DNA from: Diplonema japonicum
Taxonomy: Eukaryota; Protista; Euglenozoa: Diplonemea
Reading direction: 5' to 3'
Assembly: GCA_964019335.1 (NCBI GenBank)
Contig: OZ025744.1
Coordinates: 62,001-126,000, forward strand
Length of the DNA: 64,000 nt
Each line of letters begins with the position of its first letter. Within the stretch, counting starts at the first letter, position 1. Shown piece by piece: positions 4,538 to 63,729 of the stretch. A program made the translations under genes and the position numbers. The notes below the pieces were generated by a model, which was not told where the DNA came from, searched no databases, and saw only the letters and a list, made by a program, of their open reading frames with translations.

Positions 4538-5739
4538 TTTTATTTCACAGTTTATTTCCCTCGGCCTAAATTCTCAAAGAGCGGGGAACGTAAGTAGAGT
4601 TTTTCCCCCCCGGGCAAATAAACTAACATAATTCTTCCAGCTCTTTTTTTTATCAAAGATGCCAAAAAGCAAGAAGGTCAAGCGCATGGAAGAGATCTAT
4701 TGAGTCAAACACATATAAGAACCCTTCCTATGAAAAAGCGTGGACTGCGATGCTCGAGTCAGAGAACATAGCAGGGAAGCCGCGTGAGCAAGATATCGTT
4801 ACCTACTTCCAAAGCAGGAGGGAAGCCGGGCTCAAGGCATCGAGCCTCTGGTGTCTTTACTCCAAATTGAACGCAACCTTCAAAGCCAAGTACAACTGCA
4901 AACTACAAGCTTGGCCTCGCTTGACGTCTTTGTTAAAGTCCTGGGACCGTAACGAAGAGCGTCACGTGGCTGCCACTTTATCAAGTGACGAGGTTCAAGA
5001 TTATATTGAACAAAAAAAAGGGACCGCTAACGCCGCTATCGTTGCTTGCATGTTTAGCGGGGGCATGAGAGCTTGCGAAGTGGTGTCGATGGAAATCAGC
5101 GACATTGTTAAGAATCAAGTTGATGGGAGGTTTATCTGCACCATAGCACGTTCAAAGACGGGTGGGCACACAAAATTCCACATGTCTGGCATTTATGCAT
5201 CAGCAATGGACCAGTACTTGTTGCTACGACCTAAGAAAGAGACCAAGCGTCTGTTCCTTTCGGAGAGAGGAACGCCCATCGGCAAAAACAAGGTATACAA
5301 ACTGGGGTACGATGTGGCATCCGTCATCGGAAAGCCCGCCAATGAGATATCCAAGTTTACGTCGTTTCGACGTTCTGCGGCCACAGCTGCTGCTTGAAAA
5401 CGGCGCATCTATCTCCATGATGAGTAGATAGTTCCCACTCCACCCCTTTTTTTCTTTTCTTTTGCCATTTTTATTTTCATTCTACAAACAAGCGTGATAG
5501 TCCAGCGTATTCCGGAGTCCACGTCCCGCTCTTTGAATTTAGGCCTCGGGAAAATAAACTGTAAATAAAACGCCGTATTCCGGGGTAAAGTAGGGTTTAC
5601 CTTTTCCCTCGACAGATTGTCCTGGCTTCTCGGAACCAATTTTTACCGAGCGAAGCGAGGTAAAAATTATGTCCTCGGGAGCCACAATCTGTCTCGGGGA
5701 AATAAACCCTACTTTATTGCCCCGGAATAAATAGTTATT
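4538..5739 (+). mobile_element. Crypton-like tyrosine-recombinase element, family A (asymmetric IRs + terminal hairpin)
   Basis: Left IR 4538-4591 is the imperfect reverse complement of 5521-5570; 154-nt hairpin at 5576-5729; ends AATAGTTATT; encloses a recombinase ORF. Confidence 0.8.
4659..5431 (+). pseudogene. Tyrosine recombinase (Crypton-type), disrupted
   Basis: ORF 4750-5397 contains SSLWCLYSKL, GGMRACE (catalytic R), RSKT (K) and PIGKNKV, then KFTSFRRSAATAAA where the H of HxxR is missing. A frameshift continues ENGASISMMSR; the C-terminal W/Y box is absent and the N-terminus is frameshifted. Confidence 0.8.
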
Positions 5740-5743
5740 TTTT

Positions 5744-7474
5744 TCACGCCAAAGTGTTCGGGGCCAACCTTCCCAACGGGGTTCTTTTGACCTTCTTTTT
5801 CAGAGTATGACTTGCGTCCTGCTTCTGTGCGACCCCATCCTGCTCTTTGCGCAACACACCCCCACCCTCAGTTGCTAACCAGTCCGCCAGCGCCCAAGAT
5901 ATCCCCCTCGTAATCGGGTTGGCAAACTTCCCATCATAAGCGAAGGGGGGAACGGGGAAAAAACAGTAGTCGGTGCCGAGAAGAGGGGGCTGGTGGTTCA
6001 AAGTAACGGGTGGAAGAGGGGACCTGCAAGGTTTGTTTCGTGACAGGATGCGCATGATGACGGTACGGGAGGCGGCGGGGACCTTGTTGGAGCAAGGGGG
6101 GCTGGTGCTCTGCCCGCCGAAACTGAAGGCCCGCAGGGTGTAGTTGTCTGTGAGACAGTTGGAAATGTATCTCACAACATGCGCAGGAATCTCATTATCC
6201 GTCAGGGTCAGCCTTGAAAGACTAGTGTTCCCGCGCAGTGCAGTGCCCCAGGCGTAGCCGCCCATTTCTGATGAAAAGTTGGAACCAAAATCCAGTGAGG
6301 TCATGGTGGTGCTCTCCCCCACAACATCTGCTAACCCAACGCTGCCCTTCTCGCCTATCCCGCACTGGTTCAGATTGAGCATCGTTAGGCCTGACCTCTT
6401 CAGTGATTTCGCGAGTTCCATTGCACCGCTCATTCCTATGGGGTTGTCCTTTAGAACGACTGTCTTGACCCCGGCTATTGTCGAAATCAGTTGCGCCACT
6501 GCTGTTACCCCCTTGTCGGTCATGCCCACCTTTTCCAAGCTTAAAGATTCTATTTTGCATTCTCGTTTCGTGTTTAGAATCGCTTCGCACATTTGCACAA
6601 CACCGTTGTTGCCGATGTCCGGGTTGAACCCGAGGTTCAGGTCGCGTATACCGGAGAACGCGACTCCATGGAGGGAGCTGCGGAGGACATCTGCCGTCAG
6701 CATGGTGTTCTGAAGCTCGAGCTGATGGAGCTTTTGAGACATTACAATCGAGCTTGAAAGGTGCCCCAACATGGTAAACGCGTTCCCTTTGAAATTGAGC
6801 TCTCTTAAGGGTGAGAGGGGATCGCGGAGAACGTCTGCAAGGCAATGCAACCCGTTGTTGGTCAGACCGACCTCACGAAGACCAAGCGAGGTAAGGGATG
6901 TGTTGAATGGAAGGGCATAATGGGTTAAAGCAGCAGCCCCATGGTCCTGTAATGGGTTCCCTCCAAGGTGGAGTTGAACCAGGTTTGTGTTGTGAGGGCC
7001 AAGGCCCTTTGACAGATGGTGTATACCTACCGAGGTGATGTGATTGTCACCAAGCTTTAAACGTGACAGTGGGGGGTTGGAACGGAGCACCTCTCCGATG
7101 GCAATGCAGGAGTTGTCGTTTAAGCCGCATGCGAAGAGCTCCATTACTGAAACACCCTTCAGCATGGTTTTTCTGAAGAGGCTGTCCGTCCCCGTGCATC
7201 CCGGTTTGTTATAGGAGAGGACGAATTCTGCGTACACGTCGAGCCGTCCCCATGCCTTTATCATGCCTACTATCGATTTGAACATTCCCTCGCCCATGCC
7301 GAGGTGCGACAGCATCAGCTTCCCGAAGGGTCGCCCCTTTGCCTTGCTCGTCTTCAGGTCGCTGACCACTCGCTGGCTCACCGCGGTCCCCGTCAGCCTG
7401 CACTGCTTCACGTAAATAGCTATCATCTCGTCGATACAGGTCTCAAGGTGTGGCCGTTGTAGGGCGTCTGTCAT
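5744..7474 (-). CDS. RNI-like leucine-rich repeat protein (NLRC3/CARMIL-like LRRs)
   Basis: 576-aa ORF with ~28-aa LRRs (LSRLKLGDNHITSVG, LVQLHLGGNPLQDHGA, LTMLNLNQCGIGEKG). Confidence 0.8.
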   Translation of the reverse strand: MTDALQRPHLETCIDEMIAIYVKQCRLTGTAVSQRVVSDLKTSKAKGRPFGKLMLSHLGMGEGMFKSIVGMIKAWGRLDVYAEFVLSYNKPGCTGTDSLFRKTMLKGVSVMELFACGLNDNSCIAIGEVLRSNPPLSRLKLGDNHITSVGIHHLSKGLGPHNTNLVQLHLGGNPLQDHGAAALTHYALPFNTSLTSLGLREVGLTNNGLHCLADVLRDPLSPLRELNFKGNAFTMLGHLSSSIVMSQKLHQLELQNTMLTADVLRSSLHGVAFSGIRDLNLGFNPDIGNNGVVQMCEAILNTKRECKIESLSLEKVGMTDKGVTAVAQLISTIAGVKTVVLKDNPIGMSGAMELAKSLKRSGLTMLNLNQCGIGEKGSVGLADVVGESTTMTSLDFGSNFSSEMGGYAWGTALRGNTSLSRLTLTDNEIPAHVVRYISNCLTDNYTLRAFSFGGQSTSPPCSNKVPAASRTVIMRILSRNKPCRSPLPPVTLNHQPPLLGTDYCFFPVPPFAYDGKFANPITRGISWALADWLATEGGGVLRKEQDGVAQKQDASHTLKKKVKRTPLGRLAPNTLA

Positions 7475-7571
7475 TTTCTTTTTTTTTTTTTTTTTTTGTT
7501 ATGTCTAAAAACTTTTCTAAAAAAATTTTCTTCGGGAAAGGGGAAAAAAAAAAAAAAAAAACGTTGCAACA

Positions 7572-7604
<33 letters not shown>

Positions 7605-7606
<2 letters not shown>

Positions 7607-8214
7607 TAGAGTCCTAACTCGACCCCTAAGTTTCTGAACCGCTCAAATTCCGCCCCCTAGGTTTCCGAAATGCTCAAAGTCCACCCCCTAAGTCTTCAAA
7701 ACGCTCAAATCCCGCCCCCTAAGTTTCCAAAGTGTTCAAAGTCTCTCAGGTACTCTGCCACTTCTTCATCAAACTAATATATATATATACTAATATATAT
7801 ATAATAAAAAAAAAAAAAAAAAAAAAAAAAAGAAAGCCAGGATTGGTTTTTGTGATAATGATGGGGAAAAGAGCTGTAGGAAATGTTGGGGTGAAAAAAT
7901 GTTGTTGAGCATTTATGAAACATCGGGGGCCCAGGTTGGGCATTTCCGAAACTAAGGGGTCCGGATTTGAACATTTTGAAAACCAAGGGGGTCTACTTTG
8001 AGCATTTATGAAACTAAGGGGACCGAATTCACGCATTTTAAAACTTAGGGGTCGAGTATGAGTTTTTTTGAAGATTTGGGGTACTACACAGAGATTTAAG
8101 AAACCTTGGGGACCGGATCAGAAACTTTTTCCTCCTTAAAGATAGACCTTGAACATTTCTCAAACTAAGGGGGTGGATTTTGAGCATTTCTCGAACTTAG
8201 TTAGAAGTTTTCTC
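7605..8214. mobile_element. Foldback/MULE-like non-autonomous element with modular ~30-bp subrepeats in inverted arrays
   Basis: Left array 7605-7745 of units like CTCAAATCCCGCCCCCTAAGTTTCCAAA; right array ~7906-8200 of reverse-complement units (TTTGAGCATTT..GAAACTAAGGGG). A second partial copy lies at 25121-25205. Confidence 0.65.
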
Positions 8215-8337
8215 AAAAAAAAAAAAATGAAAGTCAGCGGAAAACAAACAAACAAAAAAAAAAAAGGAACAAATAAAAAATAAAAAAAATATGACCACAC
8301 ACGCGTGTTAATTCCTTTTTTTTTCCCCCCCTCCCCC

Positions 8338-9441
8338 CTACTTCAACATCAACACCATCCTGTAAGAAATGTGGTCCGGAACGAAGACGATTTCTTTCTT
8401 TTCGGCTCTTTCGAAGAGGATCCCGATGTTAACGGCGCCGGGGTTTGTTTGGTTCGCGAGCACCGCGAGTGCAGAGTAGGCCGAAGACCCAACATCGACA
8501 GACGCCTGGGGGTCCCACGTACCCCCTGCATCAGAAGACGTCCAGATCGTCATGTTCTGCCTGGTCACCGAAGCCTGCGTGGGCCCGGACAACATTAAAA
8601 CGTCTAGTCCTTCAGGGGAAAACCCACCAGTGTTAATAGTCGACATTTCACAACCCTCAACCGACTCAGGAACACGCACCTGGTAAGGCGGGAGAAACGT
8701 GTCACCATGGTCGTAAGAAACAGCCTGCAACCGGTGAACTCCAAGAGACCTCGAGTTAACCAACACCGACCCATTGTACAACTCCACAGCTTGACATTCG
8801 TTGGGGTGGTAATGCGGGGAAGTAATAAGCCCTCCAATAGACCATGTTGCTCCGTTGTCGTCCGACACCAGCACATGCCCGGTGCTGTCCTCCCCATCAC
8901 CGTGAATAATGTTGGTGTGGTATGACGGGACTAATATCCTGCCTGTTTTCAACTGGATGCTTGCAGGTGGTCCGGTTCCAACCCATTTCCAAGAAGGGTC
9001 GACGGTGGTGGAAGAGATGTCAGTTGGGTTTGACCAGGTGTCGCCGTTGTTGTCGGACATTATAAGATGGACCTCGCGGTTGTCGCGGCAGAATGGGATT
9101 AGAATACGTCCTGTGTGGATTTGAACAGGGGCGGCGTTTCCAATGGTGTGGCCTGGTTCGGTGTAAAGAGTTTTTATGTTGCCCCATGTCTGGCCGTGGT
9201 CCATGCTTTCTTTGTAGACTAAGGTGGTGGGAGCGTTGTCCGCGCACGATCCCGTTCTCGCCTCGCCGAACGCCAGAAGCTTGCCGTTTGCCAGCTGCAG
9301 CAAATCGGGGATTTTAATACAGTAGTAACCCGCCTCTCCTTTGCTGAACACATTGACCTCCCATGTTGACAATGATATTCGCAGCGCGGTACCGCAGATC
9401 ACAAGACTTAATAGTGTAAGCAAGTGGATGACGATGTTCAT
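8338..9441 (-). CDS. Secreted GH33 sialidase-like protein (BNR/Asp-box propeller)
   Basis: Likely start MNIVIHLLTLLSLVICGTAL (signal peptide) after an A-tract; five Asp boxes (SMDHGQTW, SDNNGDTW, SDDNGATW, SYDHGDTF, SSDAGGTW); NECQ, NSR, RQNMT and SAYS catalytic motifs; RIP motif reads KIP. Confidence 0.85.
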   Translation of the reverse strand: MNIVIHLLTLLSLVICGTALRISLSTWEVNVFSKGEAGYYCIKIPDLLQLANGKLLAFGEARTGSCADNAPTTLVYKESMDHGQTWGNIKTLYTEPGHTIGNAAPVQIHTGRILIPFCRDNREVHLIMSDNNGDTWSNPTDISSTTVDPSWKWVGTGPPASIQLKTGRILVPSYHTNIIHGDGEDSTGHVLVSDDNGATWSIGGLITSPHYHPNECQAVELYNGSVLVNSRSLGVHRLQAVSYDHGDTFLPPYQVRVPESVEGCEMSTINTGGFSPEGLDVLMLSGPTQASVTRQNMTIWTSSDAGGTWDPQASVDVGSSAYSALAVLANQTNPGAVNIGILFERAEKKEIVFVPDHISYRMVLMLK

Positions 9442-10230
9442 TTTTTTTTTTCTTTTTTTTTTCCCCCTTTTTTTCCCCCTCTTTTTTTTTTTTTTTGAAA
9501 CGTCCGCGGAAAATAAAAGGGAAAACAATGAAAGGGAAGAAAAAAATAAGGTTGAAAGGGGGGGGGGGGGGGGGGGTGTAATGGAGGACAAACGGAAATG
9601 GGCGAAGGAAATATTAAAAAAAAATATATGAGTTAAAGGAAGTCTTTGTGAGACGCCCCCTTGTTCTCATGCTCTACCTGCACCTATCCCCCTTCAGCAG
9701 CGGTTTCTCCTTCTTCGGTGGTCGTGCCGGCCTCCTCCCCAGCTTGGCTACTTTTTCCCTTCTTTCCTTTGCCCTTTGCTTCCCCAGCTCCTCCAGGTCG
9801 TACTTGGTCTTCGTTGATGCAAAGATTGCTCTTCTACTCCACCCGATCACCGCCTTCGTCCCTCCGATCAAAAAAGGGAAAAAAAAAAAAAAAGCGTTTG
9901 AAAGTGAGGAGACAGTAAAAGAAAAAAAAATCATAAAACTACCTTTTTTTTCTTCTTCTTTCTTTCTTTCTTTTTATTCACTTCCCTCCTCCCGTCCGGC
10001 TTACTTTTTTGTGCTTGAACTGGCTGTTCAAATCGTGCCCATTATGGGGAAAAAAAAAAGAAGAAGAAAAAAAGGCCTGTTGCTTGAAGCCCTCCCTGCC
10101 TGAAGCCTTGAGAAGTGACAAAGGACAAATAATAAAATGGGGGGGGGGAAGAAATTAGGAGCACATATGCATCTAATACCCAAAGCATTCCTTTTTATCT
10201 TTTCGCTTTTTTTAAAGATTCTTTTATTCT

Positions 10231-10586
10231 TTTTATTTAATTCTGTAAAGTTACATGAGGAAATTCCTAAAGAGCCATAAAAATCAGAAATCACTTTATC
10301 GTTCACGAGTAAAAATAAAGTGAAGAATAAAAATAAAGTAATAGGCCGAATTTGGCTTAAAAAAGTGCCGTAAAAATAAAGTAAAATCTGATTTTTACTC
10401 TGAGCAATTTTCGGGCTTTTTCGGCATTCGTCTTCATTTTTTGCATCTGGTGGCCGCTGACACCGCCGTAGGTCAGTGGTCAGGATCCTCGGCCACTGTT
10501 TCAGGCCCCCCGATTTTATCGAAAAAAGTTCAGGGTCCAGGATTTGATCTGGCGTCTCCAGGAGACGAGTGCGACGACTTTGCGCT

Positions 10587-10624
<38 letters not shown>

Positions 10625-11139
10625 GCTTTTACAAACGTCGCTTGACACATACATTAATCGCCTCGCAAAATATGGACGAAACCCAACCAACCCAAACCAC
10701 AGCCAGGTATCTGAGGCAAAAAACAGTCAGGCATCCGAGGCAAAAGAGGCATAAACACACTTTACCACGTTTCCGGGCCACCAAGCATCACACCTGAGCA
10801 AATGCCGAAAATTACACTGGCCATGCATACAGGCGTTCTTTTGCACAATACCTTGTTGATGAAGGAACTTGCTGTTTTGGCTGGAAGTCAGACCTGATCA
10901 AGCCCCCATGATCAAGCGCCGTCACAAATTACACAAAACCTACAGAATTCTGTCAATTTGACATCGTCTTCTCAGGCACTCAGGCTTAGTCTTGACATCA
11001 GTGTGAACATTTCGCAGAAGTGAACATAAAGGGTTCACAGTGTCCGAAATTTCCTCATTTAACTTTACAAAAAAATTAAATAAAATATCATATTAAATAA
11101 AAATCAGGTAATCTGATTTTTATTTAATAAATAGTCATT
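10231..11139 (+). mobile_element. Crypton-like element, family C, with decayed tyrosine-recombinase C-terminus
   Basis: Left IR 10231-10265 pairs with 11048-11085; perfect 17-bp hairpin 11091-11129; ends AATAGTCATT. 10801 onward translates NAENYTGHAYRRSFAQYLVDEGTCCFGWKS (HxxR and GWKS boxes), with SSAVTNY following in another frame. Confidence 0.75.
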
Positions 11140-11563
11140 TTTTTTTTTTTTTTTTTTTTTTTTTCGATGTTTTACAGCCTGATCTTCCTCCCTCCTCCGT
11201 CCATCGAATCACGCAAAAAAAAAAGAAAAAAGGAAGAAAAAAAAAAAAAAAAAAGAGGTCAAAACATGATGGCCAAAAGAAAGAGAAAACGTATAAAAAA
11301 TAAAATAAAAACCCAGGCCGGGTTCTGTGCCCCCCAGATCTGCTTACCTTTATCAAAAAAACAGAGCTGGGCAACAAAGTGTAGAGGTAATTAGCCATAA
11401 AAACAAGGACGGGGGAGATATCGCAAAGGGGGAGAAGGGAGTGGGGGGAAAAAAAAAAACCGATAAAAAAAAACAAAAAAAGGGAACCTTCTCTCTCTTT
11501 TTTTTATGTACAACTCCCACAGAAGTGGTTCCCCCCCCTCCCCCCTGTTTTTTTTTTTTGTGC

Positions 11564-11607
11564 GTGAGCACCCCCATGCACACTGAAATTTTATCGAGTT
11601 TTTTTTT
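11564..11607 (-). repeat. Dispersed ~45-bp hairpin-containing repeat, copy 1
   Basis: Reverse complement of 15052-15094; related copy at 38322-38360. Confidence 0.75.
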
Positions 11608-12179
11608 ATTTCACTCTTCGTCATTTTCTTCACTCACTAGGGGCCTCATTATTTAACGCGAAATGGCCATTGTTTAACGCGAAACGGCCATTATTTAACG
11701 CGAAATCGCCATTATTTAACTAGTTAAATAATGAGATTTTGCAGTTAAATAATGGCCCTTCAGAGTGGAAAAATGAGTCTCGCCGTGGAAAAAAATGCAC
11801 CCAACCCCTTGAAAAATCTTTTTGGGGTGGGCGTATTTTGACTATTTTTGGCCATCTGAGGCCATTCCAGCCCTTAAAAGTGGGAATAAGTGCCTTACTT
11901 CCCCTTTAAATGCCACGGCGAAATAGCAACCCCATATTACCTTAGGAAAATCCCCAAAAAGGCTGACCTGCGTGAAAAAAAACAGCAGTGAAAGCAGTGA
12001 AGAGTGAGTGACTCAAATGACGAAGAGTGAAATAAAACGACTTACTTGCCGCCAAATGAGCCATTATTTAACTCTCGTTACCCGTTTTTTTGCACTCGGG
12101 CCCTGCGGGCCCTCGTGCAAAAAATTCGGGAACTCGAGTTAAATAATGACTCATAATTTGTTGGCAATAAATAGTTATT
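11604..12179 (+). mobile_element. Non-autonomous Crypton-like element, family B, copy 1
   Basis: Perfect 23-bp IR 11604-11626/12015-12037; terminal hairpin ~12042-12169; AATAGTTATT end; 21-bp tandem repeats at 11647-11720; near-identical copy at 63155-63729. Confidence 0.9.
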
Positions 12180-21418: not shown

Positions 21419-21623
21419 TCTTTGGTTCTTTTTCTCTCCCCTCCCACCTCCTCCTTTCTAAAAACGGTATTTTTTTTTGGGGGGGATATTTTATGAAAAA
21501 TAAAACAAGGCATTCCAGAGGAGACAACAAATCTTCTATTGAGGGAAGAAGAAACCCCCCCCCCCCCCCCCCCCCTGCGCTCGGAAAACTCTGTTAGCTG
21601 AAGGAAAAAAAAAAAGAAAATAT

Positions 21624-21856
21624 TCTAGCTATTTACTACCAACAAGCAATGATTTCACCGTTACCTCGATAGGCGGGGGGAAAAAAAAAGTCATTCCTTG
21701 GCGATAGCTAAGTGGTTTTATTTAGAACTCTCTGAAATTCCTTCACTACGAGAGGGGCAAAAGGGGTGACGGTACAAAACAAGTTGTTTGTCTCCATTTG
21801 TTGACTAAGAGCTGCCGCGTGAAGTTTCAGAAATTTCAGAAGAGTGAAAAATAAAA
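21624..21856 (-). mobile_element. Degenerate, internally deleted Crypton-like element (family B-related), reverse orientation
   Basis: IR 21716-21740 versus 21831-21856; 21624-21652 resembles the reverse complement of the family B terminus; residual hairpin between them. Confidence 0.55.
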
Positions 21857-24800
21857 CTCAAAGTACAGGACAAGCCCCCCGCTAGAGGGCCGCCCTATGG
21901 GAGGGGGGGGTCTATCTGTTAATACTCCCCTTCTGGAGCATTGCTTTCATTCCGATTGAGGCCGTGAGCGTCTTGCGGAGTCGTGTGATGCGGTCCCGCT
22001 TGTAGTCGGCTTTCAATTCCATTAGCTTGTCGTGCGTGGAGCGGGTGGCGAAAATTGGCCTCCTGGAGAAACCAATAGCTGCCTTTCCTCCAATGGCGAT
22101 GAGGGACTTCACTCTTTTTCTCTCGTCCGCTGGGAAGGGGCGTCGCTTCTTCCGTGCCCTGCATGCTGTGTTTATCTTTACGATGAGAGCTTTGATTCTG
22201 CGCGCCCTATCTTTCAGCAGGCCTCCCAAAGACTTTCCGGTCGTCCATTCGAAGTCAATGGCCAGTTCCACCGCCGACACCTCCGAGGTAGTGTCCTTCT
22301 CCACCCAGCGCAGTTGTGACAACCATTGTAGCAGCGGGTTCAGGTACTGGGACAGGACCCCGCTCACTCCTTCGAGCTCGCCAGCTATCGGAACGGGGCA
22401 TTTCTTACCTACCACATTTCGAATCCACGGTAGCGGCTGTGTGTTGACATCCTCCTTCTGCATGAGCTCTACGTCTCGTTTCTCAACCACCACGGCTAAG
22501 TATCGTTGCAGCTTCTCTAGGTACGCAAAGTCATGTCCTCTCGGCAGAATCGCGTGCAATTCCAGACATAGGGGCCATCCTGTCCTGTTGCGCAGTGGTT
22601 CCAAGCCGTCCTGTGCTAGCTCTTCCTGTGCGCAGGCGCACTCGTAGAGTTGGTGGCGAAGTAGGGTTACCGTGTCCGGGTACGGTGATTCACACAGGTC
22701 GCACCTGAACCCTTGTGTGCGTGATACTGTCGTTGTTGGGACTTGGCTTATGCTCTCTTCGACTTCTTCGGTGCCGTCACCTTCTGGTGCCAGGGGGACG
22801 CTTCTTTGATTCGTTCCTGCATGCGGGCTAAGGTAGGGGACCCCTCCGGTGATAACCCGTCTCAGGCAGTAGGACATGAGCGGGTCTTTGGCTGTTTTCC
22901 ATAGTTGGTTGGTTTTGGGATCCGCTCCCGCCTCCATCCCTCTCACTGTGTTCCTCTCGTTCGCCAGCGACCTGCTCCGGGCTTTCCTCACCGCGTTCCT
23001 AAAGACGTGTCCGCGTTCGGCCCAGGGTTTGTTCCCACAGTCTAGCAATTGCGCCCAGCTCCATCCTATATAGGGGAGCCACCGACAGACCAGGTTGCCT
23101 ACTGGTCCCATCGGGGTGGACCCCGTGCCGTACCCCGCAGCGATCCGCATGCATCTCTGTCGTAGTCGTTCGTCGTCGAGCGCTCCGGACACCACCTTCA
23201 GGGAGTGGTATATCACATAGGAGAGGGGATCAGAGGACTGTGTTCACTGCGGTAGGAGAGCGTCCACGGTGGTGAGGGCCCCATAGGTTGCATGTTACCC
23301 TTGTCGACAATTTCTTGAGCGTCTCGTCACATGGGGGGGAGAACGGTCCGCTGTAGAGGCATGACGGAAGAATCGTCGTGCTGACCATGTGTGCTTTCGT
23401 CTCGAAGGCTAACCTCGTGCAACCCAGCCGGTCTAGCGAGTCAAGCGCATTCGCGGTCGGTTTGTTCCATTTCGTCCCTGTCCTGCGCGTGTTGATTTTC
23501 ACGCCAAGCCCTTTGAGGTCCGACACCGTCTTGTATGGTACAGGTACTTCCGAGCCTTTCTTCATCGCCGTTCGGTCTCCCACGACTCTCGACTTGAACC
23601 CTTCCGCGGTGCCAAAGCCCACCGTCTTTTCCTTGTTGACCTGCATCCCCGTCAGGTCGCAAAACTCTAGAGTCCCTTCGACCGCTGCCTGCAGTGAGTC
23701 CCGCAGCTTCGCTAACAGATAGGCGTCGTCGGCATATGCTAGCACCTCGGCGTCCGGCGCTACCTGCTCGACGGCCCGTATCATGATGGACAGCAAGGCG
23801 TTGATGATGATGACCGACAGCGGGCACCCCTGGAGGATACCGTTTGTGGCCTCAAACGTGTCACCAACTCCTATGGGGTACTTGAACCTCCTCGTGATCT
23901 GGGAGTACATCCCTTGGAGTGCTCTTCCTATAGATTCGTCCATTCCCAGGGCGCTCATGAGGTCAAGGGACAGCTGTTGTGGCACCAGGTCGAAGCACTT
24001 TCTAAAATCCAGGGCCAGTCCCTCCAGCGGCTCCCCATCCACCAAAGCCAGCTCCAGCTTGGTACACAGTTCCATGAGGGCTGTCGTCGTACTGTGCTTG
24101 GGCCTAAACCCGTGCTGTCTCGGCGTGATCCAACGTTCCTGCCAGTCAAGGACACCCTTCAGCCTCGTACACGCCCACAAGCGGTAGATGGTGCTGGTCA
24201 CCGTGATGGGTCGGTGGTTCAGAGGAGCTGACCCTTCACCCTTTGGAATCAGTGACACCAGGGCTGTCGTGATCTGTCTCGGCCACTGGCCTGTCTCCTC
24301 AATCAGGTTGAAGAGGTCTGCGAAAGCTCTCAGGATGCTCACCGGAAGACGTTTCAGCTCACTCATCCGCCAACCGTCCACGCCACAGGCCCCTTTGTCC
24401 GGCTTCTTCTTGATCACTTCCCTCAGCTGTTCCGCTGTGATCGAAGTACGCGACATTAGGGTTTTCTTGATCATGTTCCCGTAGCGCTGTGCAAATCGTT
24501 CGTACTGTGGCTCGTCCTCTGGTGCCCGTGCAGAAAAGACGCCCGACCAAGCGTCTCGCATCACCTCGTCCATCTTCCGTAGGTTTGCGGTCACTCCACC
24601 ATCTGCCGTCTCAACCACATCTGTCCTTTGGTTTGGGTGGTCTTTGATCCAGGCTGTGATGTGTCTGCGCTCCTTCCCAAAATCAGAGCGTATTGAACGT
24701 TCGTATGCTTTCGCCTGCATGTTCTTGCGGCATAGGAGCAGCTCCGACAACATTCCCTGGGAGTAGTCCTCAGCTATTTCAAGCTCCCCCCTGATGCTAT

Positions 24801-25889: not shown

Positions 25890-26433
25890 CTTTTTTCTTT
25901 TTTTTTTCCCTTGCCGAAGTAAAAAAAAAAAGTTTTTTTTCTTTTTCAGCATTTTAATAAAACGGAGACGGGCAGGCGGGCGGGGGGTGTACAAAGAGGG
26001 AGGAGGACCGACGGCAATCTTCTTCTTTTTTTCCCCCCCCCCTTTTTTTTTCTCGAACCCGCAAAGTCTTTTTTTGTTTTGTTTTGTTTTTTGTTTTTCA
26101 TCTCTTCTTTTCCAATACACCCATGTAGCTAAACAGGCATGGTCTGGATAAAACTTCAAATATAAAGGGGGGGGGGGGGGGGGTGGAGGAAGAAAAAGAA
26201 GAAGCGGGGGGGGTATGCCGTCAAGTCGATATTGAAAGGAGAAAAAAAAAGAAGGAAAAAAAAAGAATTATTCTTTTTGAAAAGCATTTTATATAAATGA
26301 AAAAAGATCTTTTTTTTTGTCATTTTTTCTTCCTGTGGGGGGGGGGGGGGGGGAGGAGGGTTGCCCGTTGCGATACAAAGAAAAAAAAAAGGGAAGAAAA
26401 AAAAGGGGGGGGAAATCCGCTACTCTTTTTTTT

Positions 26434-26520
26434 TTTTATTTCACTCTTCAGAAATTACTTCACGCACTGGGGGGCCCATTACTTCACGCTAAATCTCATT
26501 ACTTCACCGCAGTTTCACTA
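26434..26520 (+). mobile_element. Left-end fragment of a family B-related element
   Basis: TTTTATTTCACTCTTC start followed by repeated ATTACTTCAC boxes (variant of CATTATTTAAC). Confidence 0.6.
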
Positions 26521-28762: not shown

Positions 28763-29275
28763 GTGTCTACAATTTTTTTTTTTTTTTTTTTTTTTTTTAG
28801 CTGAGACCAAAAAAAAAAAAGACGGGGGAGGTGGAATAAATAGGATAAAGGGGTGGGGGGGGTTTTTTTTTTCTCTAACAAAAAAATAAAGTGACATGGT
28901 TTTTTTTTTTTTTTTTTTTTTTTTCCAATGAAAATCTAAAACAGGAAGAAAAAAAAAAGTTTTAAAAAAAAAATTATTTTTCATGTGCAATGTCGATCGG
29001 AATGAAAAGCGTACTGTGAAATGGATTTTTTTTTTTTTTTTTTTTTTTTAAATTTCACTCTTGCCTCATAATTTAACGCGAAACGCACTTTTATTAAATT
29101 ATGGGGAAACTTTGGGTATTTCGGGAGAAGAGCTGTACGAGTAAGTATACTGCAAGGTGTCGCAAGACGACGGGTCTGCTTTCAGCGCAAGAAACAGCAT
29201 GGGACCTCCGGAGCTTTCTACTTTTTTTTTTGCCGAAGGGACAGGCAGCCGATGTTTTCAACATCTACCTTTCCT

Positions 29276-30691
29276 CTATTGACGACAAGAAACCGTACAG
29301 AGCGGGTTGAAGGAGTTTGTTGCGTCCACCCCCCCCCCCCCCCCCCCCAATATAGCTTTTTTTTCTTTTTTCTTTTTCTCCCCAACATACTCTAAATTCT
29401 CGCTATTGAAATCCACCAACGTAACCCCTGGGTTCTCCACGAACCTCGGCACAGACACCACCCGGGTCTTCCCGCCTTTCTCCAGCTCCACAAGGTCGGT
29501 GGAAAAATCGCTCGAGTTCCCAGCGAAGACCAAATGCGGCGCCGTGTCATACTGCATCGGGTCAACCTTCTTAAAAGGGTAACACTGCAACGTGTCCGGA
29601 GCCGTAGGCGCCATAAGACCCGATTTAACCAGCGTTTCCAAAAGCTTAACATTGGGTGTTCCCAGAGTATAGGTCCGAAGCTCGGTCAGGTTTTCACCAG
29701 AGGTCCCGAAAACGTTGACACCTTTGTAAACAAAGGTAAACGGCGATGGGACCAACGACGTGTTCACCGCGTCAAACGATTTACTTAACAAACACGGATG
29801 AATAGGTTGGTAAGGGATGAACGCGTTTGTCGGGTCCGAACCAGTGGGCATGACATCAACAGGCATCGCATCAGCAACCTGAGAAATCCATAGATCCGCG
29901 AGATTCATGGAAACCGCGAGGGGTGCTTCATTGAAAATCTGGTGGTCGGACATTTCCAATTTGATTTTCTTGGCGACGACAGTGTCCTCTGTTGGTGCAA
30001 CAAGCCCACCTGTCACGATTAGCTTGCTGATGCATCTAACAATTCTCTCACACCCTAGGTTACCCCGTAGAAAGCTTGAAACAGCATCCAATTGCAACTC
30101 GTGTTGAGGAGTATTTGCTCCAAAACCCAACCCGCTTACAAATGCGATATAACAGGGCGGCTTTTCTGCGTTAACAGGTATCGTTCTGTCAGGTTGTGGG
30201 TGCAACGGTGGGAAACACCAATCGTCGACTGTGAACACTTTTCCTGAAACCTGTCCTTTGACGCACACAACTAACCCTGTACACATTTCATGGAGTTGTT
30301 TGATCCCCGACAAGTCGATCCTTCCACTTTGGTCCTCCAATGACAATGTGTCCGATTCATCCGCACGAAATTCCGCTTTCGAGTCCTCCAACGACATCCT
30401 CTCACTCTCTCCCATTTCTATAATATATTGTTCCAGGAAATCCGGTTTATGTTTCATGTTCTTATACAGCGCACCAACTATAACAGTTGGCGTGTCCTGT
30501 TTCAAGTTCACGACGCGAGACATTGGTACGCCTGGCCATCTGCTCTCGGAGGACTTGCGGCACCGCTCATAACAGAACTCCATTCTTGCGTTGTACAGAT
30601 GGGAGTACTGCTGGTTGAAGGTCTGGTCCTTCAAGAGAAACTTGTGATGCGTGTACTCGAAGTCATCACACGCTTGCCGGGGAAGCGTCAT
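29276..30691 (-). CDS. POLD2: DNA polymerase delta small (B) subunit; true C-terminus probably on a further exon
   Basis: FNQQYSHLYNARM, LEDQSGRIDL, DVMPTGSDPTNAFIPYQPIH, GTSGEN, APTAPDTLQCYPF and PHLVFAGN motifs; GTATGT donor at 29390. Confidence 0.92.
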   Translation of the reverse strand: MTLPRQACDDFEYTHHKFLLKDQTFNQQYSHLYNARMEFCYERCRKSSESRWPGVPMSRVVNLKQDTPTVIVGALYKNMKHKPDFLEQYIIEMGESERMSLEDSKAEFRADESDTLSLEDQSGRIDLSGIKQLHEMCTGLVVCVKGQVSGKVFTVDDWCFPPLHPQPDRTIPVNAEKPPCYIAFVSGLGFGANTPQHELQLDAVSSFLRGNLGCERIVRCISKLIVTGGLVAPTEDTVVAKKIKLEMSDHQIFNEAPLAVSMNLADLWISQVADAMPVDVMPTGSDPTNAFIPYQPIHPCLLSKSFDAVNTSLVPSPFTFVYKGVNVFGTSGENLTELRTYTLGTPNVKLLETLVKSGLMAPTAPDTLQCYPFKKVDPMQYDTAPHLVFAGNSSDFSTDLVELEKGGKTRVVSVPRFVENPGVTLVDFNSENLEYVGEKKKKEKKAILGGGGGGVDATNSFNPLCTVSCRQ

Positions 30692-56657: not shown

Positions 56658-56693
<36 letters not shown>

Positions 56694-56756: not shown

Positions 56757-56787
<31 letters not shown>

Positions 56788-58574: not shown

Positions 58575-58604
<30 letters not shown>

Positions 58605-58605
<1 letters not shown>

Positions 58606-59337: not shown

Positions 59338-59366
59338 AAAAAAAAAAAAAAAAAAAGAAAAAACCC

Positions 59367-59849
59367 CTACACTTTCTTGACCTTTTTATTTATGTTGATC
59401 TGAAGCTCCCTGTTTATTTGGTTGCAGATTTTGTCCGGGATCTTATTGTCGTTGGGTATGCCGGGGGTGTTAAGCTCAATGACTAGAACCTTTCTATTTT
59501 GCCTCGCGAGTTTCAACAATTCCTTGCCGCTGTCGATGTAAAGACGGTTGTTGTTAAGCCGCAGCGTGGTGAGGGAGGGGTGGACGAGCAGCACGTCCAC
59601 AAGCTCCAGTATATTTTCGGTTGACAGAAAATTGTTGGACAAGTCTATCTCCTCCACATTATCCAGGCAGCGCAGTGTGTCCACAAAACACAAGAAGCCA
59701 TGCTCCGTCCCGACGTAGTTGTTGCTGAGGTCCAAAACCTTCGTGTGCAAGCCCCCTATTCCCAGCATCGAGGCCAGTTTTGTATTTGCTTTTATACCGT
59801 GTTTGTGGCAGTTTGTCAGATAAACGTGTTGCGGGTTGACAGGTGCCAT
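59367..59849 (-). CDS. Small leucine-rich repeat protein
   Basis: Start MAPVNPQH; LDLSNNYVG, IDLSNNFLS, LRLNNNRL. Confidence 0.8.
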   Translation of the reverse strand: MAPVNPQHVYLTNCHKHGIKANTKLASMLGIGGLHTKVLDLSNNYVGTEHGFLCFVDTLRCLDNVEEIDLSNNFLSTENILELVDVLLVHPSLTTLRLNNNRLYIDSGKELLKLARQNRKVLVIELNTPGIPNDNKIPDKICNQINRELQININKKVKKV

Positions 59850-59937
59850 GTTGCCGGCTTTCTTTTTTTCTTCTCCCTCCCCCCTTCCCCCCACAATCTG
59901 TCATGAAGTTTAAAAAAAAAAAAAAAAAGATCGTTTG

Positions 59938-59980
<43 letters not shown>

Positions 59981-60127
59981 AAGAAGAAAAAATACCTCAC
60001 AATTTTCTTTTTTTTTTTTCGAAACGCTTTCGAGCCGCTTTTTTTTGTGATTCTTTTTTTTTTTTTTTTTTTTTTTTTGTAGCAGCTCCGAGAGGGGGGG
60101 GGGGAAAAAAGAAAACCATTACCCATA

Positions 60128-60934
60128 TCATGTACCAAATCCTTTTGTGAGAATTTTACCAACCAGGTCGGTGCCCCCGGTCTCCTTCACACCGCCGTTT
60201 TCAAACACATGGACATGCGTTGGGCGGACATGGTGGAGGACCGATGCGGCGTGGGTGACAAGTACGAGCGAGAGATCTTTCGCCGATTTTAGGTATTTCT
60301 GAAGTGCGATGCCTACTTTCTTTGTAGCGTCAACGTCAAGGCCGGAGTCTGGCTCATCGAGGATGGCAAGCTTGGGCTTCAGCACAAGGAGGTGGAAAAT
60401 TTCGTTGAGCTTTCGTTCTCCTCCCGAGAAGCCTGCGTTTAAAGGACCGTTCACCAACAGCTTGCCCTTTTTTGATTCTCGTTTTATGTCCAACATCTCT
60501 AAGGCATCATCAATACGTGCCTCAAAGTCCAAAACAGACAGAATTTTCCCGTCTTTTTCAGTTTTATACCGCTCGGTCAGTGCGTGAAAGAGGAATTCTC
60601 GGTTTGGGAGGCCGGGGATTTCTATTGGTGTTTGCTGCCCCACGAACAAACCGTTTCTAGCCCGTTCTTCGGGGTCTCCTGCAGTCTTCCCCATGAATTT
60701 CACGGTGCCCTCTGTCTTAAGCCCTGGGTCGCCACCCACGGCCTTCACAAAGGAGCTTTTCCCGCACCCGTTGGGGCCCATTACGACGTGGACCTCGCCC
60801 CCGCCGACACGCATAGAGACGGAGTTCAATATTTTCTTCCCTTCAACCGTGCAAACCTTCAATTTTTCAACGTTCAACAGTGGTATCGTAGAGTTCGCCG
60901 CCTTGCTCGGACCTGATGCAGGTATGGCAGCCAT
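60128..60934 (-). CDS. sufC: Fe-S cluster assembly ABC ATPase SufC
   Basis: GEVHVVMGPNGCGKS (Walker A), PEERARNGLF, QTPIEIPG, LNAGFSGGERK, AILDEPDSGLDVDA, VTH and PTHVHV are SufC-typical motifs; single NBD, no TM. Confidence 0.88.
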   Translation of the reverse strand: MAAIPASGPSKAANSTIPLLNVEKLKVCTVEGKKILNSVSMRVGGGEVHVVMGPNGCGKSSFVKAVGGDPGLKTEGTVKFMGKTAGDPEERARNGLFVGQQTPIEIPGLPNREFLFHALTERYKTEKDGKILSVLDFEARIDDALEMLDIKRESKKGKLLVNGPLNAGFSGGERKLNEIFHLLVLKPKLAILDEPDSGLDVDATKKVGIALQKYLKSAKDLSLVLVTHAASVLHHVRPTHVHVFENGGVKETGGTDLVGKILTKGFGT

Positions 60935-61095
60935 CTTTTTTTTTTTTCTTTCCCCTCTCCCCCCTTCCTGACCCAAGATAACTTTTTTTTTTAAGAAGAT
61001 GTGTTTCACTATGGGGGGAGAAGAAAAAAAAATTTTTTTCCCCCTCCTTTTTTTTATATTTTTTTTTTATTTATTTTTTTTTTTTTTTTTTAAAT

Positions 61096-62664
61096 TCACC
61101 CTCTCAAAATTCTTCCCAAGCACGCAGCGACGTAAGGCAGCAACAGGAACCTATAGAACACCCACGGGATGGACGTCAGCAGTTCGGGATGCGGGACCGC
61201 AACGTAAATAACCGGCAAAAGCGACAGCACGAGCACGGTTTTGAACAACCTCCCACCGACGGACCCACAAGGCCGGGCAACGTTCGACAAAAACGCCACT
61301 ACAGGCGAGGCGAACAGCGCCAACGGGCAGTAGTGCACGGTGCAGCTCGCGATAAATATTGTCGACACCCAAGTAAACCCGAAGTGAAGCGGCACAAACA
61401 CGCCTTTAGGTATGATGAACGCCACGGGAATCACCGCAATTAGGTGGAAACCGCTCAAAAAAGCGAGTAAAATACCGAACCCGACACGATACGGCTGTTC
61501 ATCTACAGAAAAGCTGGACGCGACGGAGGACGCGATCCCAATCCAGATTACGGCCTGCACGGTGTCGTAGTCCACAAAATGGTTGTTGTTCGTGTAGAAG
61601 TAGATCCAAAAAGATTGGTGCAACCGTTCGCAGAGATTGTTCATACCCCTCAGGATCCCGACGATAACAGCGGAGGTTTCCAGTATATTATCGTGGGAAT
61701 TACCGGTGTTCCCTTCGCCTTTCAGTGTTACAGCGTGTACCCCAACATCACGTAGAGAAGTATGCACCGCTCCTTCTGAACACAACGCGGCATGGCAATA
61801 TCCCCAAAACGACCAAAAATTGTTCCAAAGCTCCTTTGCAGAACCCGTTCGTGGGTTGGGAAGAACGGCGACCATCAAATTCCACAAAAATCCCCATTCG
61901 TCTTCTGGGTACACGGGAAGACGCTTCTCACCTCCTTGAAAAACAGTGTACGCGGACTTATTCTTGAATAAAGCAGAGACGGAATTGACCAGATCCATGT
62001 TCGGCTGGTACGCATTTGTAGATAGGGTTTGTAAATGGGTGATCGAGTGTTGGTGATTTGAATTGTGATAATCCAACGCAATACAAGCTTTAATGAAACC
62101 AGTATTAAGATGGAATTCACGACCGGACGTTTCTGTGAGATATTTCGAGAAGTTTTCAACGCCGGTTCTGTAGGATTCCCCGCCTACAACCACCAGATAA
62201 ACATCCAGACCTAGATATGCTTCGCCGGAAACCTTTGCGAGGATTTCAAGAGACAGAGAGAGGGATACTGTGTCTCTCCACCACACGGTTATGAGAAACG
62301 CGGAGCTGCCGAAGCCCCGGTCTGATTCCACTTTGATTATTCTGTTTTTTGTGCCGTTTTGTACTTCTAAAAGCCCGCCCTTGATCCTGGTTTTTACGAA
62401 GGATTCTGTTAGTTCGCCCCATCCGTTTTCCCCTGCTTTTTTTAACTCTTCTGCGACAGACAGCACCCTCGCCACGTCCTGGCGGACGATGGGGTTCCTC
62501 GTGCCGCCTATCATCAGCGAATTCTCGGAGAAGTACGTCCCCCTGGAAAAATTCAAAGGGAGCAACACTGTTCCCGCCACGCTTGCGGCGCATAGGAGCA
62601 GCGCAATGGTTTTGATGTGCTTTATGAGGATGCTGAATAGAATCTTTTTGAGTCCGAGGCCCAT
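61096..62664 (-). CDS. GAA1: GPI transamidase subunit GAA1/GPAA1
   Basis: N-terminal TM then TYFSENSLM; PNMDLVN; RGMNNLCERLHQSFWIY; multiple C-terminal TMs. Confidence 0.88.
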   Translation of the reverse strand: MGLGLKKILFSILIKHIKTIALLLCAASVAGTVLLPLNFSRGTYFSENSLMIGGTRNPIVRQDVARVLSVAEELKKAGENGWGELTESFVKTRIKGGLLEVQNGTKNRIIKVESDRGFGSSAFLITVWWRDTVSLSLSLEILAKVSGEAYLGLDVYLVVVGGESYRTGVENFSKYLTETSGREFHLNTGFIKACIALDYHNSNHQHSITHLQTLSTNAYQPNMDLVNSVSALFKNKSAYTVFQGGEKRLPVYPEDEWGFLWNLMVAVLPNPRTGSAKELWNNFWSFWGYCHAALCSEGAVHTSLRDVGVHAVTLKGEGNTGNSHDNILETSAVIVGILRGMNNLCERLHQSFWIYFYTNNNHFVDYDTVQAVIWIGIASSVASSFSVDEQPYRVGFGILLAFLSGFHLIAVIPVAFIIPKGVFVPLHFGFTWVSTIFIASCTVHYCPLALFASPVVAFLSNVARPCGSVGGRLFKTVLVLSLLPVIYVAVPHPELLTSIPWVFYRFLLLPYVAACLGRILRG

Positions 62665-63047
62665 TTTTTTTTTTTTTACACCACTTTTTTTTTTTTCCTA
62701 TTTTGTAATGGGAGGTTTTTTTTTGGGGGGGGGGAGACGGAATATAAAAATAAATAAAATAAAATAAGAAACATTGCTTTCACGAAAGTGGGGGGGGGGG
62801 GGTGGAGGGCAAAAAATTAAATAATAGCCTCCCCTCCCATATTTTGCAGATGAAAAAAAAAAGAAAAAGAAATAGGTGCCTTTTTTTTTTCCTGCAGGGG
62901 TTTCACCCTGTCATTTTCTTCTTCTTCATGTGGCTCGCTTTTTGTTTTAGATATTTCTTTCTTCTATTTATGCACCCCCCCCATTTTTTTTCCTCTTTGC
63001 GGTTGAGCCTCATGTGAAGGCACGCTTTAGCACAGTAGCTGGAAGGG

Positions 63048-63078
<31 letters not shown>

Positions 63079-63154
63079 AAGAGGACTGGCCATTTTTCTA
63101 TTATTCTCAGGCCCTTTTTTTCTTCTTCTTCTTCTTCCCTGTTTGTTTTTTTTT

Positions 63155-63729
63155 TTTTATTTCACTCTTCGTCATTTTCTTCACTCACTAGGGGCCTCAT
63201 TATTTAACGCGAAATGGCCATTATTTAACGCGAAACGGCCATTATTTAACGCGAAATCGCCATTATTTAACTAGTTAAATAATGAGATTTTGCAGTTAAA
63301 TAATGGCCCTTCAGAGTGAAAAAATGGGTCTTGTCGTGGAAAAAAATGCACCCAACCCCTTGAAAAAATTTTTTGGGGTGGGGGTATTTTGACTATTTTT
63401 GGCCATCTGAGGCCATTCCAGCCCTTAAAAGTGGGAATAAGTGCCTTACTTCCCCTTTAAATGCCACGGCGAAATAGCTACCCTGTATTACCTTAGGAAA
63501 ATCCCCAAAAAGCTGACCTGCGTGAAAAAAAACAGCAGTGAAAGCAGTGAAGAGTGAGTGACTCAAATGACGAAGAGTGAAATAAAACGACTTACTTGCC
63601 GCCAAATGAGCCATTATTTAACACTCGTTACCCGTTTTTTTGCACTCGGGCCCTGCGGGCCCTCGTGCAAAAAATTCGGGAACTCGAGTTAAATAATGAC
63701 TCATTATTTGTTGGCAATAAATAGTTATT
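63155..63729 (+). mobile_element. Non-autonomous Crypton-like element, family B, copy 2
   Basis: Near-identical to 11604-12179 over its whole length, with unrelated T-rich flanks. Confidence 0.9.

What the first reader, a model, noticed from the sequence alone, without database searches (positions are those of the whole stretch)
4538..63729. A group of tyrosine-recombinase transposons with one shared asymmetric architecture
Seen: three families with largely unrelated sequence (A 4538-5739, C 10231-11139, B 11604-12179 and 63155-63729) share one plan, as do fragments at 21624-21856, 26434-26520 and ~29050-29090. The plan is TTTTATTT-starting left IR, body, right IR ending AAATAAAA, short spacer, hairpin, then AATAAATAGT(T/C)ATT. 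A and C contain tyrosine-recombinase remnants on the same strand (R and K boxes in A; HxxR, GWKS and a candidate catalytic Y in C). B is non-coding, and its two copies 51 kb apart are nearly identical with different flanks. Known: Cryptons are eukaryotic YR-only transposons bounded by short direct repeats; here TTATTT occurs at both ends of A and B. Inference: an active, diversified YR transposon system with MITE-like derivatives that inserts into T-runs. I cannot tell whether it has been described in this lineage.
Basis: partly seen in the sequence, partly recalled or inferred. Interest (0 to 1): 0.88.

Follow-up and report, generated by a model that had tools for sequence, protein, structure and literature searches.

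The report
Hairpin-ended tyrosine-recombinase transposons in a diplonemid
The window holds several copies of very small, recently active jumping genes of a diplonemid protist; they encode only a tyrosine recombinase, yet their ends are built like those of rolling-circle Helitron2 elements, a combination I could not find described.

Summary
The 14-base tail AATAAATAGTYATT occurs 4 times in the window and 278 times in the 62.5 Mb genome, against 0 for the control. About 90% of 81 sampled tails close the same plan: a left inverted repeat (IR) starting TTTTATTT, a body, a right IR ending AAATAAAA, a spacer, a hairpin and the tail.

At least five sequence-unrelated families share the plan. A, B, C and D2 each carry their own tyrosine-recombinase (YR) gene or remnant on the same strand.

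Family B is a deletion derivative of a 1.66 kb element. Its only ORF is an intact 378-aa YR with the catalytic residues R, K, H, R, W and Y. Sixteen 571-bp B copies are 99.6% identical on average. An intact A-type YR is present in the Diplonema japonicum transcriptome.

The genome shows no Helitron Rep domain and only 2 PIF1 helicase hits, so the Helitron2 rival lacks an enzyme.

Tail and left IR, joined as in natural head-to-tail pairs, pair with the right IR and spacer into one 140-256 nt hairpin. Insertions lie in T-runs, without target duplication.

Verdict: a new variant of Crypton-class YR DNA transposons. This scan noted the same system earlier on other DNA of this genome. Whether folded DNA is the substrate is unresolved.

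The parts
4538..5739 (+). Family A element (1202 bp; truncated relative to about 1.43 kb full-length copies). Left IR 4538-4585, YR remnant 4660-5431, right IR 5525-5570, spacer plus hairpin 5572-5725, tail 5726-5739.
   Evidence: 97% identical to the D. japonicum transcript protein P0001
4750..5397 (+). Degenerate A-type tyrosine recombinase ORF. The R and K boxes are present. The His of HxxR is deleted, and the W and Y region is lost.
   Evidence: Pfam PF00589 E 8e-9; alignments
10231..11139 (+). Family C element. Left IR 10231-10265, YR box-II remnant about 10798-10887, right IR 11048-11085, short hairpin 11095-11125, tail 11126-11139 (GTCATT variant).
11604..12179 (+). Family B non-autonomous copy 1. 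Left IR 11604-11638, 5' iteron palindrome 11645-11777 (CATTATTTAAC at 21-bp spacing), right IR 12003-12037, spacer plus hairpin 12038-12165, tail 12166-12179.
63155..63729 (+). Family B non-autonomous copy 2, of the young 571-bp class. Left IR 63155-63189, right IR 63553-63587, hairpin 63588-63715, tail 63716-63729.
21620..21856 (-). Complete miniature element (about 235 bp) of a B-related family on the minus strand. It has a left IR TTTTATTTTTCAC..., a right IR ...CTAAATAAAA and a variant tail GTAAATAGCTAG. It abuts the 3' end of a high-copy repeat.
26426..26520 (+). Left-IR fragment of a B-like (G) family, cut off by a poly(A) run.
29041..29328 (+). Decayed B-type element: a left-IR-like end near 29050-29090 and a YR coding remnant at 29123-29328.

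Best explanation
These are DNA transposons whose only enzyme is their own tyrosine recombinase (YR). By that criterion they belong to the Crypton class. The host is Diplonema japonicum or a very close relative.

A full element of about 1.4-1.7 kb reads, in order:
- a left IR starting (TT)ATTT;
- a family-specific array of short repeated motifs;
- the YR gene;
- a right IR ending AAATAAAA;
- a short spacer;
- a 40-190 nt hairpin;
- the invariant tail AATAAATAGTTATT.

Short copies (230-900 bp) keep the ends but have lost the gene, and are moved in trans.

Inferred mechanism: the YR exchanges strands at the two ends and joins the tail to the left IR, presumably as a circle. The same joint is seen in natural head-to-tail pairs. 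This joint then recombines with a T-run, usually near its 3' edge, without a target duplication beyond a possible TT.

In the joined form, tail plus left IR lie opposite right IR plus spacer. The whole region is one long imperfect palindrome, and the tail's AAATAG is always unpaired. I take this palindrome to be the scaffold that the recombinase recognises.

Shown: the anatomy, the YR linkage, recent amplification, T-run insertion and the joined form as DNA. Inferred: the circle, the strand exchange, and whether the palindrome acts as duplex, cruciform or folded single strand.
For: - Tail count: 278 in the genome against 0 for the control. 75 of 81 sampled tails belong to families A, B, C or D, and about 62 show the complete plan.
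- IR pairing: left and right IRs match at 29-35 of 40 positions within a family. Between unrelated families the left IRs are mostly no more than 13 of 31 alike, and D1, D2 and D3 show compensatory blocks.
- YR linkage: genes or remnants lie on the same strand in A, B, C and D2. A and B YRs are only 27% identical, so each family has its own lineage rather than a captured gene.
- Autonomous B: a 1662 bp element with one ORF, an intact 378-aa YR. R142, K169, H249, R252, W275 and Y284 are conserved in at least 90% of 61 homologues.
- Recent activity: five autonomous copies are 98.4-99.9% identical, and sixteen 571-bp copies average 99.6%.
- Expression: an intact A-type YR is in the D. japonicum transcriptome.
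- Protein family: the profile finds 7587 homologues, mostly 300-450 aa. 60 of 61 tested carry only PF00589, with no reverse transcriptase. The best solved relatives are XerC, XerD, XerA, IntI4 and Cre.
- Joined form as DNA: junctions TAG(T/C)TATT|ATTTCAC occur in three independent pairs, at least two of them between different families (L026, L035, L054).
- Folding: joined constructs of five families fold into one hairpin with dG -34 to -79, against -8 to -23 for shuffles.
- Relatives elsewhere: two metagenome contigs (L077, L078) have the same cyclic order IR-YR-IR-hairpin, and the joined form folds at dG -82.
- Target: T-runs on both sides with a 5' excess (median 7.5 against 4, p 5e-4). 55 of 56 copies have no target duplication.
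Against: - No empty site, excised circle or de novo insertion was seen. The public runs are short Logan contigs that break at the repeats.
- The exact boundaries are ambiguous by about 2 bases, because both flanks are T-rich.
- The plan is almost that of Helitron2, which uses a different enzyme.
- Families whose YRs are only 27% identical share the same tail. So the tail may answer to one active enzyme or a host factor rather than to each family's own YR.
- One autonomous copy (L012) has a 16-bp flanking direct repeat that conservative recombination does not predict.
- The A and C copies in this window are dead.
Confidence: 0.75

Rival explanations
1. Helitron2/Helentron-type rolling-circle elements. 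The asymmetric terminal IRs, the 3' hairpin and insertion after T-runs would serve a HUH Rep/helicase supplied in trans. The YR genes would be cargo.
For: Published Helitron2 features are a 5' asymmetric terminal IR 0-2 bp from the end, a 3' one just upstream of a 3' hairpin, a 5' hairpin, a 5' T, insertion between TTTT and T/C without duplication, and occasional 7-19 bp duplications (PMC3627910). Here I see the same layout, T-run targets and one 16-bp duplication.
Against: The genome gives no Helitron_like_N candidate (the bacterial controls cannot ring, so this negative is weak). It gives only 2 PIF1 hits, one of them a single 503-aa frame. Four families each carry a different, co-diverged YR at the same place and strand. 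The 1.66 kb autonomous form has no room for RepHel. The IRs are 30-45 bp rather than 8-15, and the hairpin is up to 190 nt.
Confidence: 0.07
2. RNA-mediated copies. Read on the other strand, each element ends in GTGAAATAAAA followed by a long A-run. They could therefore be retroposed by the abundant LINE machinery or by a DIRS-like reverse transcriptase in trans, with the right IR plus spacer acting as a DIRS-type internal complementary region.
For: The T-run is longer on the 5' side. L012 has a 16-bp flanking repeat and an A-rich tail in that orientation. DIRS elements have an internal region complementary to both termini (PMC6681497), as seen here. LINE-like repeats are very abundant.
Against: 55 of 56 copies lack duplications. 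Many copies have only 3-4 T at the 5' side. Junctions between different elements are exact, with no A or T run. The YR gene would be antisense to the RNA. None of the 61 homologues tested in Pfam has a reverse transcriptase domain.
Confidence: 0.08
3. The same YR transposons, but the palindrome is nothing more than duplex binding sites. Inverted arrays of recombinase-binding motifs (iterons) would organise an ordinary double-stranded synapse, as in other site-specific systems, and no hairpin would ever form.
For: In B the hairpin arms are made of the same 12-nt motif that is repeated at 21-bp spacing in the 5' region. Top and bottom strands fold equally well, so there is no sign of a chosen strand.
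Against: In the autonomous B copies both hairpin arms changed together (T:A to A:T) while the 5' iterons did not. Pairing runs on across the joint into spacer and tail in five unrelated families, with a conserved unpaired AAATAG. The loop of the A hairpin occurs in both orientations.
Confidence: 0.4

Closest known systems
Crypton DNA transposons (Goodwin 2003; Kojima and Jurka 2011, PMC3212892)
   Same: A tyrosine recombinase is the only enzyme and there is no reverse transcriptase. There are no long terminal repeats. A short shared sequence sits at both ends (TT to TTATT). Movement is presumed to go through a circle. Feature-based look-alike clusters are eukaryotic YR-only proteins, some with the Crypton-linked DUF3504 domain.
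   Different: Cryptons are described as lacking terminal inverted repeats and as having only 4-6 bp direct repeats. These elements have a 30-45 bp asymmetric IR pair, a long 3' hairpin, an invariant 14-nt tail, iterons, T-run targeting and abundant MITE-like derivatives. They are only 1.4-1.7 kb long, with no GCR1_C or DUF3504 domain.
Helitron2 / Helentron (Bao and Jurka 2013, PMC3627910)
   Same: Asymmetric terminal inverted repeats, with the 3' copy just upstream of a 3' hairpin. There is a 5' hairpin. Insertion is at T-runs without duplication, and the 5' end is T.
   Different: There is no Rep/helicase in the elements and none was found in the genome. The enzyme is a Xer-like YR. The IRs and hairpin are several times longer.
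DIRS1-type YR retrotransposons with an internal complementary region
   Same: A YR enzyme. An internal segment is complementary to the start and the end of the element, so that the joined ends can pair with it.
   Different: There is no reverse transcriptase, RNase H or methyltransferase. There are no DIRS-type terminal inverted repeats. The size is 1.7 kb rather than about 5 kb.
Folded-DNA recombination sites of bacterial Xer/IntI recombinases (integron attC, CTX phage attP(+)); from my own knowledge
   Same: An imperfect hairpin with conserved unpaired bases serves as a site for a Xer/IntI-like YR. XerC, XerD, XerA and IntI4 are the best solved relatives.
   Different: The host is a eukaryote. 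No strand bias was found. No evidence for single-stranded intermediates was obtained. This is a resemblance only.

Membership tests
Crypton (YR-only DNA transposon class) | Encodes a tyrosine recombinase with the catalytic R-K-H-R-(H/W)-Y residues, and no reverse transcriptase or other transposase | tested here: met
   The 1662-bp B element has a single ORF. It matches PF00589. R142, K169, H249, R252, W275 and Y284 are conserved. 60 of 61 homologues carry PF00589 only.
Crypton (YR-only DNA transposon class) | No terminal inverted repeats; only 4-6 bp terminal direct repeats | tested here: not met
   TTATT is present at both ends, but there are also 30-45 bp asymmetric IRs, a hairpin and a tail. 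Head-to-tail joints leave only TT shared.
Crypton (YR-only DNA transposon class) | The YR groups with a named Crypton clade (F, S, A, I, V...) in a tree | not tested
   No named Crypton reference sequences could be obtained. The Atlas look-alikes are leads only. Named hits are uncharacterised insect proteins.
Crypton (YR-only DNA transposon class) | Insertion without target-site duplication | tested here: met
   55 of 56 copies have no flanking repeat beyond T-runs. No empty sites were available to confirm this.
Helitron2 / Helentron | The autonomous copy encodes a Rep (HUH) plus PIF1-like helicase | tested here: not met
   PF14214 gives 0 candidates (weak, because the controls are silent). 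PF05970 gives only 2 hits in 62.5 Mb. The autonomous elements encode the YR only.
Helitron2 / Helentron | Asymmetric terminal IRs, a 3' subterminal hairpin, a 5' hairpin and insertion at T-runs | tested here: met
   compared with the description in PMC3627910. The IRs and hairpin here are much longer.
DIRS-like YR retrotransposons | Reverse transcriptase and RNase H alongside the YR | tested here: not met
   There is no second ORF in the elements and no reverse transcriptase in the homologues.
DIRS-like YR retrotransposons | An internal region complementary to both termini | tested here: met
   Right IR plus spacer pairs with left IR plus the first part of the tail in five families. The definition is taken from PMC6681497.
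Folded single-strand recombination sites (attC-like) | One strand is the substrate, seen as strand-asymmetric pairing or shown by experiment | tested here: inconclusive
   Top and bottom strands fold with similar energy. There is one compensatory change within B and strong covariation between families.

The most novel reading that the evidence does not exclude
A eukaryotic transposon whose Xer-like tyrosine recombinase acts on a folded DNA hairpin, as single strand or as cruciform. The hairpin would be formed when the joined ends pair with an internal complementary segment. That is the logic of integron attC sites and the CTX phage attachment site, and of the DIRS internal complementary region, but in a 1.7 kb DNA-only element. 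Such an element would also be a plausible ancestor of the DIRS end structure, and an example of convergence with Helitron2 ends.
Probability: 0.3. Interest if true: 0.9.

Novelty: new variant of a known kind. Interest (0 to 1): 0.72.

Why it matters
Eukaryotic tyrosine-recombinase DNA transposons (Cryptons) are poorly understood. Their ends are hard to define, and no transposition mechanism has been shown.

This genome offers a compact system that looks active and has sharply defined ends:
- a 1.66 kb autonomous element with one gene;
- hundreds of near-identical miniature derivatives;
- several sister families for comparison.

The end structure links three topics that are normally kept apart: Helitron2 termini, the DIRS internal complementary region, and folded-DNA sites of bacterial Xer/IntI recombinases. 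It therefore makes a testable case for what those structures do.

No recombinase-type transposon is mentioned in the one diplonemid genome paper I could read (PMC10161547).

Tried and rejected
- Read laying. All public runs are short Logan contigs that end at the repeats. No empty allele and no interpretable circle joint was seen.
The 1.6-2.0 kb contigs behind the closest foreign YRs (P0003, P0006-P0008) could not be read.
I could not fetch further YR families, copies of the high-copy repeat, or empty sites noted by earlier readers.
- The search for homologous proteins with the single B YR found nothing. The full HMMER scan did.
A single protein gave 2 loci.
- tRNA-like parts in C and D: ARAGORN found none in the window, and Rfam found only a sub-threshold miRNA-model match on the D3 hairpin (L019) in representative C and D loci.
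- Strand asymmetry of the hairpins: none.
- Orientation relative to neighbouring long ORFs: 27 same against 24 opposite, so no bias. T-runs and A-runs are equally common in the window.
- A TTATT(T) crossover core, as in Cryptons, is rejected as the overlap. Three independent head-to-tail joints read TAGTTATT|ATTTCAC, not TAGTTATTTCAC.
- Target duplications: none except in L012.
Full report
**Setting.** The window is G000:C97:62001-126000 of a 62.5 Mb, 132-contig genome. Nearly all long ORFs lie on the minus strand, as in euglenozoan polycistronic units. A protein from the EukProt Diplonema japonicum transcriptome (P0001) is 97% identical to the family A ORF of the window. The genome is therefore D. 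japonicum or something very close to it.

**Observation.** The tail AATAAATAGTYATT occurs four times in the window, all on the + strand, against none in 100 shuffles. It occurs 278 times in the genome, against 0 for the reversed control.

I fetched 3 kb upstream of 60 tail sites, taken in contig order, and added loci found through the YR. Of 81 distinct tail sites, 36 belong to family B, 23 to D, 9 to A, 7 to C and 6 to none. The loci fetched through the YR add some A and autonomous B copies to these counts. About 62 sites show the whole plan: a left IR starting TTTTATTT, a body, a right IR ending AAATAAAA, a spacer, a hairpin and the tail.

In the window the hairpins fold with z-scores of -5.8 to -11.2. 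Left and right IRs match at 29-35 of 40 positions within a family. Left IRs of unrelated families are mostly no more than 13 of 31 alike. The related families D1, D2 and D3 differ by blocks that changed on both sides. The shared plan is therefore real and maintained by selection, not by common descent of the sequence.

- 21624-21856 is a complete miniature element on the minus strand.
- 26426-26520 is a left-IR fragment only.
- 29041-29328 holds a left-IR-like end plus a B-type YR remnant.

**The enzyme.**
- The A ORF (4750-5394) matches Phage_integrase at E 8e-9. It has lost the His of HxxR and the W and Y region. The intact A-type protein exists as a transcript.
- Family B, non-coding in the window, is an internal-deletion derivative of a 1662-bp element (L013:2933-4597). 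That element's only ORF is an intact 378-aa YR. Five such copies are 98.4-99.9% identical, and sixteen 571-bp derivatives average 99.6% identity. Amplification is therefore very recent.
- C carries an HxxR..GWK remnant, and D2 carries a clear N-terminal-domain remnant. Both lie on the same strand as the plan.
- A and B YRs are only 27% identical. Each family has its own recombinase lineage, which argues against gene capture.

A profile of these YRs finds 7587 homologues among 1.84 billion representatives, mostly 300-450 aa. Of 61 examined, 60 carry PF00589 alone, and the R-K-H-R-W-Y residues are at least 90% conserved. A few named relatives are uncharacterised insect proteins. The best solved relatives are XerC, XerD, XerA, IntI4 and Cre, aligned over both domains.

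**The Helitron2 rival.** The plan is strikingly like that of Helitron2: asymmetric terminal IRs with the 3' copy just upstream of a 3' hairpin, a 5' hairpin, and insertion after TTTT without duplication (PMC3627910). B even has a 5' palindrome made of iterons.

Even so, the genome gives no Helitron_like_N candidate (a weak negative, because the controls are bacterial). It gives only two PIF1 hits. The autonomous elements have no room for a Rep/helicase. I reject membership but keep the resemblance as a finding.

**Ends and target.** Three independent head-to-tail pairs, at least two of them between different families, read ...TAG(T/C)TATT|ATTTCAC... (L026, L035, L054). This is what recombination between a tail|left-IR joint and the 5' junction of a resident copy would give.

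Single copies sit in T-runs. The run is longer on the 5' side (median 7.5 against 4, p 5e-4). The base after the tail is T, C or A. 55 of 56 copies have no flanking duplication. L012 has a 16-bp one that I cannot explain.

**The palindrome.** When tail and left IR are joined as in the natural pairs, five families each fold into one continuous hairpin of 140-256 nt, with dG -34 to -79 against -8 to -23 for shuffles. The right IR pairs with the left IR, the spacer pairs with the first bases of the tail, and AAATAG stays unpaired in every family. This is the geometry of a DIRS internal complementary region (PMC6681497), here in an element without reverse transcriptase.

Two metagenome contigs that encode relatives have the same cyclic order, IR-YR-IR-hairpin. 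Their joined form folds at dG -82, and the gene is inverted relative to the plan.

Evidence that the pairing itself matters:
- a compensatory T:A to A:T change in both hairpin arms of the autonomous B copies, while the 5' iterons stayed unchanged;
- both orientations of the asymmetric loop in family A.

Evidence against a single-strand reading:
- both strands fold equally well;
- the arms are built of iterons spaced 21 bp apart, as duplex binding sites would be.

I leave duplex against folded DNA open, at roughly 40:30, with the remainder undecided.

**Literature.** Searches found no description of YR transposons with this end structure. The D. papillatum genome paper mentions TATE, MULE and Helitron-like ORFs but no recombinase-type DNA transposon.

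**Earlier notes of this scan.** They describe the same system on other pieces of this genome. I tested the joined-hairpin idea and agree with it. I did not find the strand specificity that one note proposed.

**Verdict.** This is a real and apparently recently active group of compact YR-only DNA transposons. As far as I could find it is undescribed. It is a new variant of the Crypton kind, with Helitron2-like and DIRS-like end architecture.

Noticed in passing
window 21857-23216 (-), and loci L039, L061, L068: A very young, high-copy repeat: 464-620 first-look candidates, and the 40 scored are 98-100% identical. Its 3' end normally reads ...CTGAG TTTTATTTTT. In the window the miniature YR element starts exactly there. 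In three other copies the same end is followed by TTT plus a solo tail AATAAATAGTTATT and then unrelated DNA. This could be a footprint, a target look-alike or a deletion product; I cannot tell which.
   Followed up: partly
L012 (G000:C36:1-7000), flanks of the autonomous B copy: This copy alone is flanked by a 16-bp direct repeat, TCTCAAGTCCCCCTTT, with an extra TTATTTATTT at the 5' side. It lies next to a long subtelomere-like tandem array. Conservative recombination does not predict this.
   Followed up: partly
hairpin tips: window 5645-5660; L025, L062, L032 and others; L077:375-395: A 13-nt motif, CTCGCTTCGCTCG, sits at the hairpin tip in 18 of 23 D copies, some C copies and family A. In A it occurs in both orientations (flip and flop). 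The metagenome relatives carry a similar GAGCGAGCTTGCGAG at their tip.
   Followed up: partly
window 11645-11777 and 12056-12154: The 12-nt motif CATTATTTAACT is repeated four times directly at 21-bp spacing and twice inverted in the 5' part of B. It also forms both arms of the 3' hairpin. These are likely recombinase-binding iterons.
   Followed up: partly
window 9567-9960: A non-coding stretch upstream of the BNR/sialidase-like gene. Its summed contig depth in public runs is roughly a thousand-fold higher than that of the neighbouring gene. This points to another abundant repeat, which I did not identify.
   Followed up: no
G000:C74:86073, C114:139002, C25:462179 (540-550 aa frames); C66:174577 (818 aa): Further Phage_integrase hits lie in much longer open frames. 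They may be other YR element types, for example retroelements. They could not be fetched.
   Followed up: no
L077 and L078 (contigs JAAUXV010002448.1 and JAAUYM010029031.1): Relatives from an unidentified organism have a hairpin of about 190 nt placed before IR1 and the YR gene, with IR2 at the other end. This is the same circle order as here, but the gene is inverted relative to the plan.
   Followed up: partly
genome-wide, families A-D: Families whose YRs are only 27% identical share an identical 14-nt tail and identical IR ends (TTTTATTT and AAATAAAA). This suggests cross-mobilisation by one active enzyme, or a constraint from the target or a host factor.
   Followed up: no
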